The notes under the pieces are model-generated. The model ran no database searches, had not been told where the DNA came from, and saw only the letters and a program-made list of their open reading frames with translations. Source: Bigelowiella natans CCMP2755 (lineage: Eukaryota; Protista; Cercozoa). From it: a stretch of 64,000 nucleotides of DNA. The stretch is taken from contig ADNK01001088.1 of NCBI GenBank assembly GCA_000320545.1, positions 132,070 through 196,069 on the forward strand. The letters run 5' to 3'. The position numbers and the translations under genes were made by a program. Shown here piece after piece: positions 1-7,854 of this stretch; the stretch's first letter is position 1, and every line of letters starts with the position of its first letter.

Positions 1-2897
1 TCGAGCAAGCCCAGGGCAGTTATCCCGAGATGAAACCGATTGTGACAAATCGATGTTGATTTTGATCTCTTTCCTACTCCTTGCTCTGGTCCTTCTCTTG
101 CTCTCCCTTTCGATCTTGGGGCCGCTGCTTGGAAGGTGCCAATGCAAGTGCCGAACCATTTGAGACGTTCCTGCAAAAGGGATGGGGGATAAAAATGAGG
201 GCGGAAACTGGGAGAGACAAGTAGAAAAAGAGAACCATCATGGGAACAAGAATGGCAACCACACAGAATGCGCGTCTGCTCTCACTCTCTGTTGCATCGT
301 ACCTTTTGAATCCTACTCGCGGTTTCGGCCAGAGACTTTTTGGAGTAGCAGACTCTGCTAACGATGTGTCCACTGCCTGCTGTGTTTGTTGTAGTATCGT
401 CGTCACATCTACTTGGATCCACATCCACAGCGTAGATGTCGTATTCCTCTCTCGCCTATGGTAGTACACGATGCATGCATGCAGCATAGGAAGAATGCTC
501 AACAGCGAAAAATGGTTTCGTGCGTATGTATATCGATTTAGTTCTATGAAGCAACGTATTGTCAGAGCAGCCTCTACCATAACAGGAAAACCAGGATGAT
601 GATAATCAAGTATGAGGAGAAATATATCGCTACAATATGGCATCATCGTTGTCAGCTGTTGCACGAAATGTGGATGGTTGAACGACAACAAGACAAGTTA
701 CCATCGAGCAGTCAAAAGAGCGACTACAATATCTGCTGAGCGCGTTCGAAACCTGAGTTCTTTCATCGTGATCTAATAGACGAAACGAATCGGATACATG
801 GGGCTCAACGCGTTTCTTTGTCTGTCGTTGTCTCTTCCTTTTCTTCCTCTTACTGCGTTCCTCCTGCGTCTTTGCAAGCTCGTAAGCATTCCCCTCGTTT
901 GATATCTTCCGCAATTTCGCAATGAAGAAACCGTCTGTCCCGTGTTCGTGGGGGTACAGGCGGCGGGCATGCGCCATGCATGCTGAAAATCGTCGGGAGG
1001 ATGACCCGCATCGTTTGACACCTCGGCTACCAAAGGGGAAAGAAGAGATCGAAATAACCTGGTAGTCAAGTACCTCTTCTTAATTTAGGGGGGGCGCGAT
1101 GAAAACTACAACAAAAAATACTACAAGCTACTACTACAATAACAATGACAACAACAACAACTATTACTACCACATATGATGATTTAGCAGGAAACATTTT
1201 CTTAATGTCTTTTGTCAGTATCCATGACCGTCGCATATGCCCCCCCCCCCCCCCACACACACACAACCTTAACATCCCTTTTCGAAAGGAGGGCTTCAAT
1301 CACTTCTTCATTCTCCTTTACCGTTATTGAGCACGTCGAATAGACCATTTCTCTGCAAAAAAATCGTAGCAACACACCATTGAGCAGATAGTCTCTCAGA
1401 GAAGGAAAAAGGCCGAAATCTTACTTAATATGACATTGGCGCGGAACAGAACTCATCGGTATTTATATCGTTCATAGCTGCCCCCTCCCTCCCCCTCCTC
1501 CTCCTCAATCAATTGGCTGCTCTCTTTCAACTTATGATGTATGACCCTCCAGGTCTCAAGGCATCGACCGCTGCAACGATTAACTCCTTTTGTACTTGAG
1601 AAGATCGCTGGATATCGTGCGGGGTTCGCTTGCTCCTGGCCGAGACATCTCGAGACAAAATCCCAGTCCCAGAACAGGGGGCGTCTAGAAGCACTTTGTC
1701 GAACACCATTCGATGATGAGGATGATGATGATGATGCTGCGAAGGGTATTGGAGATTCTTTGTGCCATCAAACGATGTGACGATGCAGTTCGTTAACCCC
1801 AATCGGTGGATGTTGCATGTCAAAGCTGGGATACGCCGTACACTTGCATCGTTGACAATGAGAGTGCCCGTGTCCTTCATGAGACTTGCCAACTGCGTCG
1901 CTTTGCCTCCAGGAGCGGCACATAAATCTAATACCTGCATGCGATTTTTGCAACAGATTGGTTCTTCTCAACAGCGGTCTCTTCATGACGTTCAATGAGC
2001 AGCATCACCGCAATCACCACCCATTCATTCATTCATGCCAATGTATCACTGTCACTGCATACTATATCGCCAGGTTTTGGTTGGAGAGCCAGAGCTGGAA
2101 GCACCGAAGCAGCCCCTTGAAGCATGTAATGTCCGCACAGGTACTCAGGAGACGCTCCTAAGGGAATTGGCGGTTTCTTCGTAGTTGTCAACAATCCAGA
2201 CTCTCGAGGAAACTCGTTGCTGATGTTTAGATCAAACTTGACACCGCGTAATTCTAACGTCCGACGAAGACTCTCAGCCGACGTTTTCAGCTGATTTGTG
2301 CGGATGGTCAATGGCATGGGTTTGGTGTTGACCTATAAAATGATAGATCAATTTCAGTGCGTGTCAGTCTTGCTGCTGCTGCAACAGCAGTAGGGATTGC
2401 AGCAAGGTTTATTTAATTACGTGGAGAAAGTCCACAAGCTTTTTGGGTCCGAGGAGATCGAGGAAGCCAGTTACAAGGGACTGCAGATACCCAAACCCCC
2501 TAGCCAATTCGCGAATGAGTTGCTCGTGCAACTGTTCGCGCATCAATGGCTGCTGTCCATTTTCTTGGGATGTGATCCAGCACCGGGATCCAGTGAGATT
2601 GTGAAGAATTCGGTACGCATTTTTTACCGCCGTGATATTCGCGATCCTTTTAGATGATGGGCCTTGGTTCTTCGGGAAGACATCGCGAATGTTTGACCGG
2701 ATACGAGATTTCAAGCGTTTTGGGGTATTGAATTGGCGGACATTTTGGGCTCGGCGTGTCGAAGAGTCATGGCGATTACTGCCCTTGAGGAGAAGACTAC
2801 GTTGATAATCCTCAGCGGCGACGGCGACGGACGCGGCTGCAGGAAAGAGAATGATGAAGGCCCTCGTTGAAAACATGTTGGCCGGCCCAGCTGCCAT
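1..2897 (-). CDS. NOP2: NOP2/NSUN1-family rRNA m5C methyltransferase fused to a C-terminal NIP7-like domain, with N-terminal signal-peptide-like leader; 3' end lies outside the window
   Basis: Phase-consistent GT-AG exons 2897-2421, 2332-2063, 1934-1546, 1352-1268, 1058-702, 455-303, 170-<1. NOP2 motifs: PLTIRTNQLK, GASPEYLCGHYMLQGAASVLP, VLDLCAAPGGK, FDKVLLDAPCSGTG, MVYSTCS, RRLYPHEHGTDGFFIAKLRK. NIP7-like motifs follow in frame: FRLLDHDERTQVSNALSRY, RVCYSKKSLAETASRI, LKWFGTCIGTF, RFHLGITALGLL. Confidence 0.9.
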
Positions 2898-3724
2898 GCT
2901 CTGCCTCGCTCAATCCAGGGGCATCCCTATTGTCTGTGCCAGGATGCGAAAGCTACCAGCGAGAGGGCAGTGGCAACTTCGGAGAACGCTTGCATTTTCG
3001 GAATGCTCGAGAGAGAGGGAGGGGCAGCAACCGTGTGAGGTGAACCAACGATATAGTAATATCCTGTTTATCTTAGATATTTGACGCACTAAAATATGTC
3101 TAAAATTATATCCTGAAGAACCTTTTTTTGCTGGAATTCTATCAGCGGAATATCCCACATTGCAGCCGCATTTCACGTTTGCAATCAGTCAGACTCCAGC
3201 GGCCTGCTAGCGGAGATCGACGAGGCAGAGTTACCTCCTATATTTACCGAAAATGAGCACATGTTATTGTCGCAGAGATATTTCGGCAAGAGATTCCATA
3301 ACGGGCCAAAGTTGCTTTGGAACACAATACGGCTGCGCGAACTCGCTGACGCAAGAGAATTTCAAACCCAGTAGTCCAAATAATACTTTTGGAAAGAAGC
3401 TTTTTCCATCATCTTTTGACAACATATTATTGTCGCTAATATTATATCGATCCTGTTATTAAGTCGTTAAGACGTTGATCAGCCTTAGTAGATCTTATAA
3501 CAGAGAGCGGCCTGTGGTTCTGGTAGGGGATAAACAACATAAGGGATTTACGTGTGTGCGCCCCTTTCTCGCCTGTCGAACGAAGACCTAGTCGATTTGT
3601 CAGTGAGATTAGATTAACTGCAGGGGGTACAGCCGCCTTGGAAGAGAGAAAAACAGCCTTCTAGCTCGAGCTTCTCGACGGTTCATCCTCATCATCTTCG
3701 ATACCGCTGAGAAGAATAAGTGAG

Positions 3725-4870: not shown

Positions 4871-7854
4871 TAGTAGTAGTAGATGTAACGGCAAGAGTAG
4901 CAGCACCGGTAGTAATGCAAGGAATAGATTTATACAGACACGCATTACTACAGCGACATTGCCACATCCTTGTGGATTCTGAATAGTAAATGCGAGAGAG
5001 TGCTGAGAACATCGGAAGGAATAGAAAATGAACAGCTATGGCAATAGGAATAAAACTAAGCAGCTAATAGTGACCATCCGCAGGTCGAGGAAGCAGCCTT
5101 TAGCGATCAAGCAATACAGAGGCTGAAGAAAGCTCTTCACACTGAGGTGAGTAGTCATTTGTGAAAAGAGGCACTGTCTTCTTCCTTCCGCGCACGCAAA
5201 CAAACAGTAGTGTCTAAACAGCTTCCACTACCATTAGATGGACCGTGCGGCTGCAGAGGAGGCGCAGAAGGCAGCTGAAAAGGCCAAGAAAGCAGCTGAG
5301 GAAGCTAAAGCGAAGGAAGAAAATGAGACAGAAGGTCTAGTCTAGCTAATCATAAGAAAGTCGATGTCATTTCTATCGTCCTCTTATGTTTAAACTTTCT
5401 CAATCACTTAGAAGCTGGATCTGAAGAGAACAGCGATGATGACGACGGCAAGGAGGAAGAAGACGATGAAAAGGCCAAAAAGAATAAGAAACTCAAACAG
5501 AGTAAGTTGTCCAAAATTCAAGTGATATTGTGGGCGAAAGAAATCCCCGCTGTTCACTTAATCTCTGCATTTCTCGAATACACTGTTTGTGTCGAAGCTG
5601 GTTGAATGATATATTTGAATTGAGGGTGTCTCACAAGCAGTCTTCTTCCCTATTCACAGCGGTGAAAGTGGCTGGATCTGTCGTGAAAAAGGTAAATGAG
5701 TTAACTTGAAAAGGGAGAAGTAGTAGTGTGTATCTTCATTATCTCGATATTTGACGTGAGAAACGACCTTTCTCATAGATTCTTGCCGTCCTATTTAGCT
5801 ATCAATTCCCTACTACATTTGATACAGAATCTTGCTGAACTGAAGAATAATATGAATAGGTTTGCGAACACTACAATAGCGACGTGATCTCAACGCCATT
5901 CAAGAAAGCTTGCAAGAAGGTCCATGTTGTTCATTGTTGTTTCTCCGTGCTATATTTCCTTGCAGGCCACAGATGCCATAGAATCGATGATTCAATCTCT
6001 GATTTCGTTCATCATCGTTGTGATTTGATTTGGCAGTTAAGAAAGAAAAGGGACATTAAAAAGCAAGTGGTCATCACAATGGGTGGGATAGATAATACAT
6101 GATGATGCACATTTTCCGTTGACAGACAGCGATGCTGCTGCTTTCGAATTGATGATAGGAATTGAAACACCTGCAACAACAAAACAATAACGCTAGCACT
6201 AGCCAGTTGGAAGTGCATAGAATAGAGAGTGCCTTCAAAATGATTTCATACCAAAGCTAGCCTGCAGCTTTAGGACACCATTCTCTCTTGGTGTTTGAAT
6301 ATACAAACAACTGAGAGGCTGCTGCTTCTGCCATGCTATAACCATTACCTACGATTTGTTACATTGTGTGTTGTTGTTGTTGTTGTTGTTGTTGTTGTGT
6401 TGTCCACTCTTGCTGTTGGCAACGTACGTCTGTCAGGGGTTGTATTGGAAATGATTCGGAAGGACGAAGAAATGAACCCGTCAGCTCTCAAACCCGGATT
6501 TATCGCCAACCACACGGAAAGGTAGTAAGTAGTAGTAGTAGTAGTAGTAGTAGTAGCTGTTGTTGTTGCTGCTATTGCTGTTGTGTATGCAGCCAGCGGC
6601 ACCACGTAGTAGCTCAATTCGTCTTGCACCGTGGCAAGGAACGATTGCTTATGTTAATATTGTTGTTGTTGTTGCTGCTGCTGCTGCGAACTTGAAAGAA
6701 ATAATGAGGTGATGAGCTTGCAGTAGTAGCGCTCCAAGGAAGTATTTTTTAAGTCCACGTTCTCCATGGAGAGACCAGCAGCCATAAGAGAGACGACTCA
6801 TATTAAAACGGATTGCTAAATAGCGCCCTGAGAAACTCACTACCATTGACTGAATCAAATGTGACCGAATCTCATTGACTCGATTTGCATTGGTTTCGGT
6901 TTGAATTATCAGGAGTTGCAGCTCCGTGTGTCCCCGCTCTCCGAAGAAGATAAGTTCCTGCAAGGCTTGCAACACAGTCATGAACTCCATCCATGGTTAT
7001 GTGCATGCAAACTAAAAGCTTATGACGTCAACGAGCATGCGTGGTTGCTGTCATCGCTGCTACGACTCCTCTCAATATCTTCTTCTCTATCGTTTTGGTT
7101 GCCTCTCCTCTCCCCGTCTGAATTGTTCTCCACATGTAATAATCAGCTCATGTAGTCAAGCACAAGCAGAAGCTGTCGAAAGAGCAGCTCGTTGACGGCA
7201 CATGCGAGCGCGTCTTGGGCAGGATGCCCTCTATCGAGGAGGAAGACTATGAAAGCGTTTCGTACATTTGCAACCAGTAGGACTTTGTAGCTCTCCCTCT
7301 CCCTCTCTCTCTCGTTCTCTCTCGTTCTCTCGCTTTCTCACCACAGCTTAATCATCACTGCCAATCCACAAACAGGATAGTTCGTTGGCAAGATAAGGAA
7401 ATCGTCCATATAGTGAGAGAGACACCGCAGGTGTGAAGGATAATGACAGCACTTATTTCCACCTCAAGCATGCTATTTCGACTTTTCGGCGGAAGGGCGA
7501 AGACTTTCGCATATTGTGATTAATTGCCGCTGTTTGTTCTTCTTTGGTATGCATGCAGTCGGAGAGACGAAAGGCCTTAGGAAACCTATGCTACAAGCTG
7601 AAGTTCTGTCAGAAGGTCGTGCGTTTTCATTGGTTTCTTGTTTGTGTGGGGATGTAGGTGACTATTCACAATTATGCTCACGATGTGGTTTCGGCGGTGT
7701 ACCTTGCATGGTGCTCCATGTTTCCATATTACAGAAGAAAAAATCAAAAAAGAAAAAGTCTTCCGCTGACACGGAAGAGAAAACCAAGCCATCCCAAGGC
7801 TTAGAGAAAGTTACGGAGGGAAAAGGGAAAAACAGTGTCTCTGATGAATTATAA
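3725..7854 (+). CDS. ER-resident protein: signal peptide + CS (p23-like) domain + two saposin-like (canopy-like) domains + Lys-rich tail + SDEL (~480 aa)
   Basis: 18 phase-consistent exons: 3725-3874, 4000-4059, 4163-4303, 4405-4460, 4547-4592, 4708-4788, 5084-5146, 5238-5334, 5412-5501, 5660-5691, 5860-5919, 6037-6082, 6437-6521, 6913-6995, 7156-7276, 7376-7430, 7559-7615, 7735-7854. Signal peptide MLIVKFGLLVASLLGSSVNA. CS motifs PAFKWAQSPDDVHLYIKF and WKRLLK. Two 6-Cys patterns (CEAC..C..C..CSSVC; CKAC..C..C..CYKLKFC). Ends VSDEL-stop. Confidence 0.8.
4789..4882. repeat. Compound intronic microsatellite (GTA)n/(GCA)n; representative of dozens in the window
   Basis: Directly visible. Similar (TA)n, (CA)n, (GA)n, (GAT)n, (GAA)n and (GTT)n tracts occur throughout introns. 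Confidence 0.95.

What the first reader, a model, noticed from the sequence alone, without database searches (positions are those of the whole stretch)
1..1058. NOP2 is fused in frame to its pre-60S partner NIP7
Seen: the ORF track ends the methyltransferase at 630. Splicing 702|455-303|170 (all phase 0, GT-AG) instead continues the frame into NIP7-like motifs in the correct order: FRLLDHDERTQVSNALSRY (cf. MRPLTEEET..VFEKL..Y), RVCYSKKSLAETASRI (cf. RVYY..), LKWFGTCIGTF (cf. L.SLG.CLGKF) and RFHLGITALGLL (cf. KFRLHITAL). A basic NLS-like linker (RSKRKKRKRQRQTKKR) joins the two parts. Established: Nop2 and Nip7 are separate proteins that act together in yeast and human pre-60S particles, and bacterial RsmF carries PUA-like C-terminal domains. 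Inference: a single-chain eukaryotic-type Nop2-Nip7 module, which would fix stoichiometry and allow co-import.
Basis: partly seen in the sequence, partly recalled or inferred. Interest (0 to 1): 0.85.

Follow-up and report, generated by a model that had tools for sequence, protein, structure and literature searches.

The report
Signal-peptide NOP2 fused to NIP7-like module
In the alga Bigelowiella natans, one spliced gene joins a spare copy of the rRNA methyltransferase NOP2 to a very divergent copy of its ribosome-assembly partner NIP7, behind a signal-peptide-like leader, so the single chain is probably sent to the alga's endosymbiont compartment rather than to the host nucleolus.

Summary
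Junctions 702|455 and 303|170 (minus strand, GT-AG, phase 0) occur in spliced transcript contigs from three independent studies. In two of them one contig runs from the 5' UTR through the methyltransferase into the NIP7-like exons.

Left of the window the gene continues. A phase-1 intron leads to a last exon that passes Pfam's NIP7 PUA model (30.7 bits, cut-off 23.8). The model has 8 exons and 784 codons.

The NIP7-like part has no start codon of its own: TTT stands where NIP7 has its first Met. Both catalytic Cys motifs of the methyltransferase are intact.

This is not the cell's main NOP2/NIP7 pair. Conserved, unfused copies lie on other contigs. A published gene list also names nop2 and nip7 in the nucleomorph genome, so this is a third set.

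The N-terminus looks like a signal peptide followed by a transit-peptide-like stretch. That suggests import into the periplastid compartment or nucleomorph; this is inferred, not shown.

The public gene model covers only the last exon (136 aa). No orthologue or other such fusion was found. Verdict: a real fusion, a new variant of a known kind, moderately interesting.

The parts
2898..3031 (-). 5' UTR (approximate transcript start)
   Evidence: Contigs of X1 and X3 run about 31-32 nt beyond L002:9000, which is window 3000. The first ATG of the frame is at 2897.
2421..2897 (-). Exon 1 (159 codons): leader plus the N-terminal pre-methyltransferase region
   Evidence: ORF 2409..2897. Donor GT at 2420-2419. 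Joint L002 8332|8421 is in the contigs.
2814..2897 (-). Signal-peptide-like segment (aa 1-28; h-region aa 13-28)
   Evidence: There are 16 consecutive uncharged residues. The best 11-aa Kyte-Doolittle window scores 2.3. AVAA precedes ED. No signal-peptide predictor was available.
2598..2813 (-). Transit-peptide-like segment (aa 29-100)
   Evidence: 17 K/R against 4 D/E, and 11 S/T, in 72 residues.
2063..2332 (-). Exon 2 (90 codons): NOP2 N-terminal/ferredoxin-like region
   Evidence: Weak hits to PF22458 and PF17125, both below cut-off. TIGR00446 positions 1-75 score 45.9 bits. Joints are in the contigs.
1546..1934 (-). Exon 3: core of the m5C methyltransferase
   Evidence: PF01189 scores 130.6 bits. 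The best solved relatives are human, S. pombe, yeast and Chaetomium NOP2. Fragment homologues named Nop2 reach at most 54% identity.
1662..1685 (-). Motif IV, DAPCSGTG (first catalytic Cys)
   Evidence: Read directly from the exon 3 translation.
1268..1352 (-). Exon 4: carries motif VI, YSTCS (second catalytic Cys, 1328-1342)
   Evidence: Contig piece L002 7271-7352. GT-AG ends and phase confirmed. Translation.
897..1058 (-). Exon 5, first part: C-terminal end of the NOP2 fold (...YPHEHGTDGFFIAKLRKISN)
   Evidence: S. pombe and human NOP2 align here at 30.7-31.1 bits. PF01189 positions 178-199 also match.
786..896 (-). Exon 5, linker of about 37 aa with a basic cluster (810-857)
   Evidence: Translation. 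There is no stop and no in-frame ATG between the two modules.
702..785 (-). Exon 5, last part: NIP7-like N-terminal helix, beginning with TTT (Phe) where NIP7 has its initiator Met
   Evidence: Aligns to residues 2-23 of the canonical B. natans NIP7 (z 2.4; 60 of 2000 shuffles reach it). Same exon and same frame as the NOP2 end.
456..701 (-). Intron 5; if retained, the frame stops at 630-632
   Evidence: Spliced out in the contigs of X1, X3 and X9. A separate 221-nt contig covering L002 6453-6673 exists in X1 only (depth 10.9 against 17.9).
303..455 (-). Exon 6 (51 codons): NIP7-like pre-PUA region with an acidic/Thr-rich insertion
   Evidence: Aligns to canonical exon 2 (RVxY... motif; z 2.0). 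The intron after it sits at the same place and phase as in the canonical NIP7 gene.
1..170 (-). Exon 7, which runs 37 nt beyond the window's left edge to L002 5963: pre-PUA core (GTCxGxF, RFxLxITAL) with a basic insertion. Exon 8 lies wholly outside the window (L002 5304-5719, stop at 5304-5306): NIP7 PUA domain with two insertions. The 3' end lies near L002 5182.
   Evidence: Joint L002 5963|5719 is in three runs. Exon 8 hits PF03657 at 30.7 bits, above the 23.8 cut-off. Its only solved-structure matches are yeast and S. pombe NIP7. Read ends pile up at 5182.

Best explanation
This is a real, expressed fusion gene of Bigelowiella natans. It has 8 exons, 784 codons and lies on the minus strand.

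Shown:
- One spliced mRNA encodes, in order: a signal-peptide-like plus transit-like leader, a NOP2-type rRNA m5C methyltransferase with both catalytic cysteines, a basic linker of about 37 residues, and a complete but very divergent NIP7-like module (pre-PUA plus PUA).
- The NIP7-like part has no initiator codon of its own, so it can only be made as the tail of the methyltransferase.
- It is an extra paralogue pair. The conserved host NOP2 and NIP7 genes are separate and unfused.

Inferred:
- The PUA module, which in yeast and human is supplied in trans by Nip7 in the Nip7-Nop2 complex of nucleolar pre-60S particles, is here tethered in cis. That would guarantee 1:1 delivery with a single targeting signal.
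- Because of the leader, the chain is probably translocated into the ER and on to the periplastid compartment or nucleomorph, where it would act on endosymbiont-type pre-60S particles. I put about 0.5 on this destination.
For: - Junctions and phases.
- Transcripts: spliced contigs of 2444 nt (X1) and 2568 nt (X3) run from the 5' UTR exon to the PUA exon. X9's 1856-nt contig runs from exon 2 to the PUA exon. All junctions it covers are removed, in three studies.
- Methyltransferase: PF01189 at 130.6 bits; top solved relatives are eukaryotic NOP2.
- NIP7-like module: PF03657 above cut-off on the last exon. Its only solved-structure matches are NIP7, at co-linear positions. Co-linear similarity to the canonical NIP7, with two shared intron positions.
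- Unfused paralogues: canonical NIP7 with its own ATG on C1643; canonical NOP2 with an acidic N-terminus and no hydrophobic leader on C1883/C1884.
- Leader composition.
- Literature: a signal peptide is expected for nucleomorph-targeted proteins (PMC6411479). Nip7-Nop2 is a known complex (PMC10068337), and both proteins sit in the same pre-60S entries.
Against: - Assembled contigs cannot prove that single molecules span the whole gene. Raw reads were too few to help (17 reads).
- One run has a separate contig from inside intron 5. This may reflect an isoform that stops at 630.
- The pre-PUA exons are not detected by Pfam PF17833 exon by exon.
- No orthologue was found, so conservation of the fusion is untested.
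- The nucleomorph gene list for B. natans and L. oceanica already names nop2 and nip7 (PMC4035089 Additional file 1). An imported pair is therefore not obviously needed.
- The leader was judged by composition only. It cannot separate a periplastid or nucleomorph destination from a plastid one.
Confidence: 0.75

Rival explanations
1. There are two products, not one. NOP2 is made from an intron-5-retaining mRNA that stops at 630. The NIP7-like protein is made from its own transcript or by internal initiation. The continuous contig merely merges overlapping transcripts.
For: X1 holds a 221-nt contig from inside intron 5, at depth 10.9 against 17.9 for the mRNA contig. The public gene model treats the last exon as a separate 136-aa protein. 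The tool itself warns that a contig across two genes shows no single transcript.
Against: The spliced 702|455 junction is present in all three studies. The conserved NIP7 N-terminal helix has Phe (TTT) at the Met position. The only in-frame ATGs in exon 5 are inside the methyltransferase (977) and at the last codon of the exon (704-702), and out-of-frame ATGs intervene. The intron contig reaches neither exon boundary convincingly and is absent from X3 and X9. The few 3'-end reads cluster only after the PUA exon.
Confidence: 0.08
2. The fusion is real, but the NIP7-like tail is a decaying remnant with no function. Only the leader-bearing methyltransferase matters.
For: The tail is extremely divergent. 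An exhaustive phmmer search found no NIP7 at E below 0.001. PF17833 finds nothing. There are large low-complexity insertions. The single-sequence fold had pLDDT 37.
Against: About 285 codons stay open across three introns with intact GT-AG sites and correct phases. The retained similarity sits at the core NIP7 motifs, in order. The PUA exon still exceeds Pfam's curated cut-off.
Confidence: 0.1
3. The hydrophobic N-terminus is not a working signal peptide. The fused protein acts in the host nucleolus beside the canonical pair, or it goes to the plastid stroma.
For: No predictor or experiment was available. The basic linker could serve as an NLS. The nucleomorph is listed as encoding its own nop2 and nip7. 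The SP+TP architecture is shared with plastid-targeted proteins.
Against: The leader shows a 16-residue uncharged h-region followed by a +13, Ser/Thr-rich stretch. It replaces the long acidic/basic N-terminal region seen in the canonical host NOP2. A conserved host pair already exists. NIP7/NOP2 act on eukaryote-type large-subunit precursors, which a plastid stroma lacks (established knowledge).
Confidence: 0.07

Closest known systems
Nip7-Nop2 complex of nucleolar pre-60S particles (yeast 6ELZ/6EM5, S. pombe 8ESQ, human 8FKT)
   Same: It has the same two protein families, NOP2-type m5C methyltransferase and NIP7 pre-PUA+PUA. The catalytic motifs IV and VI are retained. Both partners sit in the same solved pre-60S entries. 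A review describes a Nip7-Nop2 complex that aids peptidyl-transferase-centre formation (PMC10068337).
   Different: There the two are separate polypeptides from separate genes. Here they form one chain, MTase then NIP7, with a signal-peptide-like leader in place of the usual long charged N-terminus. The NIP7 part is far more divergent and carries several insertions.
Bacterial RsmF/YebU (2FRX) and NSUN6 (5WWQ): m5C methyltransferases with a built-in PUA domain
   Same: They combine an RsmB/F-fold methyltransferase with a PUA-type RNA-binding domain in one chain. RsmF has it at the C-terminus, as here. This is from my own knowledge of the YebU structure paper. Both are sequence relatives of exon 3.
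   Different: Their PUA domains are not NIP7-family (UPF0113) and lack the pre-PUA domain. The fusion here is a secondary joining of two eukaryotic genes, not the ancestral RsmF architecture. The MTase is closer to NOP2 (102.6 bits) than to YebU (79.8 bits).
Nucleus-encoded, nucleomorph-targeted proteins of chlorarachniophytes (histones H2A/H2B, POLD, RFC1, RPA1)
   Same: These are extra nuclear-function paralogues encoded in the host nucleus with an N-terminal signal peptide plus transit-like leader (PMC5635652; PMC6411479).
   Different: Their localisation was shown by GFP fusions, whereas none has been shown here. None of them is a fusion of two interacting partners. The nucleomorph is reported to keep its own nop2 and nip7.

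Membership tests
NOP2/Nol1 subfamily of RsmB/F m5C RNA methyltransferases | Methyltr_RsmB-F domain (PF01189) above the curated cut-off | tested here: met
   Exon 3 alone scores 130.6 bits against a cut-off of 27. Exon 5 supplies the last 22 profile positions.
NOP2/Nol1 subfamily of RsmB/F m5C RNA methyltransferases | Closer to eukaryotic NOP2 than to other NSUN/Rsm members | tested here: met
   Solved-structure ranking: human NOP2 102.6 bits, S. pombe 92.6, yeast 90.5, then YebU 79.8, NSUN6 67, NSUN5 41.6 and NSUN2 30.4. Fragment hits are named Nop2. The TIGR00446 whole-protein cut-off cannot be judged exon by exon.
NOP2/Nol1 subfamily of RsmB/F m5C RNA methyltransferases | Two catalytic cysteines (motif IV PC, motif VI TC) and the SAM-binding motif I | tested here: met
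   DAPCSGTG (window 1662-1685), YSTCS (1328-1342) and DLCAAPGGK are read directly from the translations.
NOP2/Nol1 subfamily of RsmB/F m5C RNA methyltransferases | Methylates the conserved C in helix 89 of large-subunit rRNA (C2870 in yeast) | not testable with these tools
   This needs bisulfite or mass-spectrometry mapping of rRNA.
NIP7 (UPF0113) | C-terminal NIP7-type PUA domain (PF03657) above cut-off | tested here: met
   Exon 8 scores 30.7 bits against a cut-off of 23.8, covering profile positions 9-73 of 73. The only solved-structure hits are yeast and S. pombe NIP7, aligned to their residues 103-135 and 159-179.
NIP7 (UPF0113) | N-terminal pre-PUA domain (PF17833) | tested here: inconclusive
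   No profile hit for exons 5-7 taken singly and none at this locus in the genome scan. However, all co-linear exon alignments to the canonical NIP7 beat shuffles, and two intron positions are shared. The joined sequence was not searched.
NIP7 (UPF0113) | Free-standing protein of about 180 aa with its own initiator | tested here: not met
   TTT (Phe) stands at the Met position, in frame with NOP2 and in the same exon. This is the fusion itself. I file it as a NIP7-derived module, not as a NIP7 orthologue.
Periplastid/nucleomorph-targeted proteins of chlorarachniophytes | N-terminal signal peptide followed by a transit-peptide-like stretch | tested here: inconclusive
   Composition and hydropathy fit, but no trained predictor was available.
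Periplastid/nucleomorph-targeted proteins of chlorarachniophytes | Localisation to the periplastid compartment or nucleomorph | not testable with these tools
   This needs GFP fusions, as in PMC5635652, or proteomics.

The most novel reading that the evidence does not exclude
The host nucleus encodes a single-chain Nop2-Nip7 that is imported into the nucleomorph, although the nucleomorph still lists its own nop2 and nip7. That would be a snapshot of the host taking over endosymbiont 60S assembly. The fusion would have been selected because two obligate partners must cross the ER and periplastid membranes, and a nuclear envelope without a canonical pore complex, in equal amounts on one targeting signal.
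Probability: 0.35. Interest if true: 0.75.

Novelty: new variant of a known kind. Interest (0 to 1): 0.6.

Why it matters
Natural fusions of two proteins that elsewhere work as a complex are independent genetic evidence for that partnership. They also show which chain ends can be linked, which is useful for engineering and for structural work on the Nip7-Nop2 step of peptidyl-transferase-centre maturation.

In this organism the gene is also a handle on a nearly unstudied process. [quoted passage not shown]

A host-encoded, leader-bearing assembly factor that duplicates nucleomorph-listed genes would bear on how hosts gain control over endosymbiont gene expression.

Practically, the public 136-aa gene model for the last exon (JGI Bigna1 133727) covers only the end of this gene and should be merged with the upstream exons.

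Tried and rejected
- **Exhaustive phmmer of the PUA exon** against 1.8 billion representatives returned only the organism's own 136-aa model and an unrelated repeat protein.
- **Two metagenome scans.** The MTase exon found nothing. The junction exon found 80 loci, which matched essentially only the generic ...DGFFIAKL motif. The longest match (L109) is a bacterial RsmB followed by a stop and a separate downstream gene; L036 also ends in a stop.
- **Word-indexed homologue search of the junction exon** found nothing. The same search with the MTase exon returned only Nop2 fragments at 54% identity or less, with no close orthologue.
- **ESM Atlas look-alikes** for exons 7 and 8 gave no usable hit.
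- **Single-sequence AlphaFold of exon 8** gave pLDDT 37 and was unusable, so no fold search was run.
- **Exact look-up of contigs encoding P0001** found nothing on record.
- **Rfam scan of the locus**, to test whether the intron-5 contig is a hosted snoRNA, gave only sub-threshold hits on microsatellites.
- **DBP10 C-terminal domain scan**, to look for a second leader-bearing B-factor, found one locus only, and I did not follow it up.
- **Papers not held:** the papers by Gilson 2006, Curtis 2012 and Hirakawa 2009, and the supplements of Suzuki 2016.
- **Origin of the paralogues** (green-algal or host) could not be tested, because full-length eukaryotic homologues are out of reach of the length-limited searches.
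- **Joined protein:** Every search was exon by exon, by reference. Complex prediction was not used, because single exons are not meaningful binding units.
Full report
**Observation.** The gene lies on the minus strand.
- Exon 1058..702 carries the end of an RsmB/NOP2 fold (...YPHEHGTDGFFIAKLRKISN) and then a basic stretch.
- Still in the same frame and the same exon comes FRLLDHDERTQVSNALSRY...CSM.
- GT follows at 701-700. AG at 457-456 precedes exon 455..303, GT is at 302-301, and AG at 172-171 precedes the exon starting at 170.
- All three boundaries are phase 0. A script confirmed GT-AG at every intron and a consistent phase chain.
- Unspliced, the frame stops at 630-632.

**Extension beyond the window.** The window is G000:C2649:132070-196069. 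I fetched 6 kb to the left as L002, where window position w equals L002 position w+6000.
- Exon 7 continues 37 nt past the window edge (...ITALGLLEKNARFKLILTKK-G) to a GT donor at L002 5962-5961.
- After an intron full of TA/GA/TG microsatellites, AG at L002 5721-5720 opens a last exon (L002 5719-5304). It reads G-TMSFVYGND...ADVGEYIRDQDRLL and ends in a stop.
- The split codon G|GA is Gly.
- The full model has 8 exons and 2355 nt, which is 784 codons plus the stop.

**Transcripts.** One reads call was allowed.
- Logan contigs of three runs from three studies (X1, X3, X9) lack the introns they cover, so they derive from spliced RNA. Six joints are listed, each with CT..AC ends on the plus strand. 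The seventh intron follows from the contig pieces.
- In X1 (2444 nt) and X3 (2568 nt), one contig runs from beyond L002 9000 (5' UTR) to L002 5350 and 5225, past the stop codon. In X9, one contig (1856 nt) runs from exon 2 to the 3' end.
- Junctions 702|455, 303|170 and the new one to the PUA exon are each present in all three runs.
- The raw-read run gave only 17 reads, mostly after the PUA exon. Five molecule ends fall at L002 5182, which is probably the poly(A) site.
- Caveat: a contig is an assembly, not a molecule.
- X1 also holds a separate 221-nt contig from inside intron 5 (L002 6453-6673, depth 10.9 against 17.9). It is absent from X3 and X9. It reaches only 3 nt into exon 6 and stops 28 nt short of exon 5. 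It may be retained intron, excised intron or pre-mRNA. Rfam found no hosted RNA there.

**Identity of the two halves.**
- *Methyltransferase.* Exon 3 alone gives PF01189 at 130.6 bits. Its best solved relatives are human, S. pombe, yeast and Chaetomium NOP2, ahead of RsmF, aTrm4, NSUN6, RsmB, NSUN5 and NSUN2. The exon 5 start aligns to the C-terminal end of the same NOP2 chains. Motif I (DLCAAPGGK), motif IV (DAPCSGTG) and motif VI (YSTCS) are intact, so the enzyme looks active.
- *PUA domain.* Exon 8 passes Pfam's NIP7-specific PUA model PF03657 (30.7 bits, cut-off 23.8). Its only matches among solved structures, even at E up to 10, are yeast and S. pombe NIP7. They align co-linearly to residues 103-135 and 159-179.
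- *Pre-PUA exons.* These are too divergent and too split for PF17833.
- *Comparison with the canonical NIP7 of the same genome.* Each of six co-linear exon pairs scores above shuffles (z 2.4, 2.0, 4.4, 2.4, 6.6, 2.8). Six non-cognate pairs do not.
- *Shared introns.* Two of the three introns in the NIP7-like part sit at exactly the same place and phase as in the canonical gene. One is phase 0 before E-x-L-...-GTC. The other is phase 1 inside the Gly before (T/V)MS(F/Y)xYGN.
- I therefore treat the tail as a NIP7-derived pre-PUA+PUA module with several lineage-specific insertions.

**No independent start for the NIP7 part.**
- Where NIP7 proteins begin MRPLTEEE..., this gene reads S-F-RLLDHDE..., with TTT at the Met position.
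- The in-frame ATGs of exon 5 are at 977, inside the methyltransferase, and at 704-702, the last codon of the exon.
- Out-of-frame ATGs lie between them.
- The conserved N-terminal helix can therefore only be translated as a continuation of the methyltransferase.

**It is a third set, not the housekeeping pair.**
- The organism is Bigelowiella natans. The last exon is identical to EukProt EP00466 / JGI Bigna1 133727, a 136-aa model. The public annotation thus splits the locus.
- A conserved NIP7 with its own ATG (MRPLTEEETTTFFEKLAKYIG...) lies on C1643.
- A conserved NOP2 lies across C1884/C1883. It has the usual long acidic/basic N-terminal region and a charged C-terminal tail, and no NIP7 is attached.
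- The gene-content list for the nucleomorph genomes of L. oceanica and B. natans names both nip7 and nop2 as shared genes (PMC4035089, Additional file 1). I could not inspect those sequences.

**Leader and likely destination.**
- Residues 13-28 are 16 uncharged, mostly Ala/Ile/Leu/Val/Phe residues. The best 11-aa Kyte-Doolittle window scores 2.3, and the stretch ends ...AVAA|ED.
- Residues 29-100 have 17 K/R against 4 D/E and are Ser/Thr-rich.
- This is the signal-peptide plus transit-like pattern of chlorarachniophyte plastid, periplastid and nucleomorph proteins. PMC6411479 states that a signal peptide is expected for any nucleomorph-targeted protein. PMC5635652 validated such leaders by GFP for nucleomorph replication factors.
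- Because NOP2 and NIP7 act on eukaryote-type large-subunit precursors, and a host pair already exists, the periplastid compartment or nucleomorph is the most sensible destination.
- This remains inference. The nucleomorph-listed nop2 and nip7 argue that import is not strictly required.

**How it most likely works.**
- In yeast and human the Nip7-Nop2 complex binds nucleolar pre-60S and helps form the peptidyl-transferase centre (PMC10068337). Both chains sit in the same solved particles.
- Here the PUA-bearing partner is tethered to the C-terminus of the enzyme by about 37 residues that include a basic cluster. This sits at the place of the Lys-rich tail of ordinary NOP2.
- One targeting signal then delivers both activities in 1:1 ratio.
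- The domain order, methyltransferase then PUA, recalls bacterial RsmF. The PUA here is NIP7-type, however, and the join is secondary.

**Rivals.**
- Two overlapping transcripts or products: about 0.08.
- A real fusion with a decaying, functionless tail: about 0.10.
- A non-functional leader, meaning the host nucleolus, or a plastid destination: about 0.07.
- Evidence for and against each is given in the rival entries.

**Novelty.**
- I found no paper describing a Nop2-Nip7 fusion.
- PMC5635652 merged 306 adjacent B. natans gene models and predicted 147 nucleomorph-targeted proteins in supplements that I could not read. The merged model may therefore already exist there, undiscussed.
- No orthologue or second example was found in any sequence search.
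- I class it as a new variant of a known kind.

**Limits.**
All searches were exon by exon, by reference.
- The origin of the paralogues (host or green alga) and conservation in other chlorarachniophytes remain open.

Noticed in passing
L002 5304-5719 (left of the window): The public B. natans annotation (JGI Bigna1 133727, aug1.22_g8435; EukProt EP00466_P009048) models the last exon alone as a 136-aa protein. It is really the C-terminal PUA exon of this 784-codon gene.
   Followed up: yes
G000:C1643:71670-73061 (L005, L003): This is the canonical, highly conserved, stand-alone NIP7 gene, with at least six short exons and its own ATG. Its sequence is close to animal and fungal NIP7.
   Followed up: partly
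G000:C1884:8440-9172 and C1883:427-814 (L023, L022): The canonical NOP2 gene appears split across the end of one contig and the start of the next. It has many short exons, poly-acidic and poly-basic tracts, and no NIP7 attached.
   Followed up: partly
window 453-673 (L002 6453-6673): A separate 221-nt contig from inside intron 5 is present in run X1 only, at more than half the depth of the mRNA contig. It could be retained intron, a stable excised intron or pre-mRNA. No Rfam family matches it.
   Followed up: partly
L002 8249 (window 2249, inside exon 2): In run X9 the transcript contig breaks here and carries 30 unrelated letters. A second X9 contig covers exon 1 plus 66 nt of exon 2. This is probably an assembly break rather than an isoform.
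   Followed up: no
L002 5740-5859, and window 1126-1270: Two introns are packed with simple repeats: (TA)n(GA)n(TG)n in intron 7, and a G-run plus GTT/GTA repeats in intron 4. The reads tool skipped both stretches.
   Followed up: no
window 1713-1736: A His-rich insertion (HHHHHPHH) sits inside the methyltransferase core, between motifs III and IV.
   Followed up: no
run X17: A run labelled as a different organism (organism B, in the same study as X11) holds 28% of the exact 31-mers of this locus. That points to a very close relative or a mislabelled or mixed sample. It could show whether the fusion is shared.
   Followed up: no
same genome, other contigs (notes s1-706928, s1-716406): Earlier unchecked notes of this scan report a divergent DBP10 and a TSR2-like factor with similar signal-peptide-like leaders. 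If these are real, a set of imported ribosome-assembly factors may exist. My DBP10CT scan found one locus only (C3185), which I did not inspect.
   Followed up: partly
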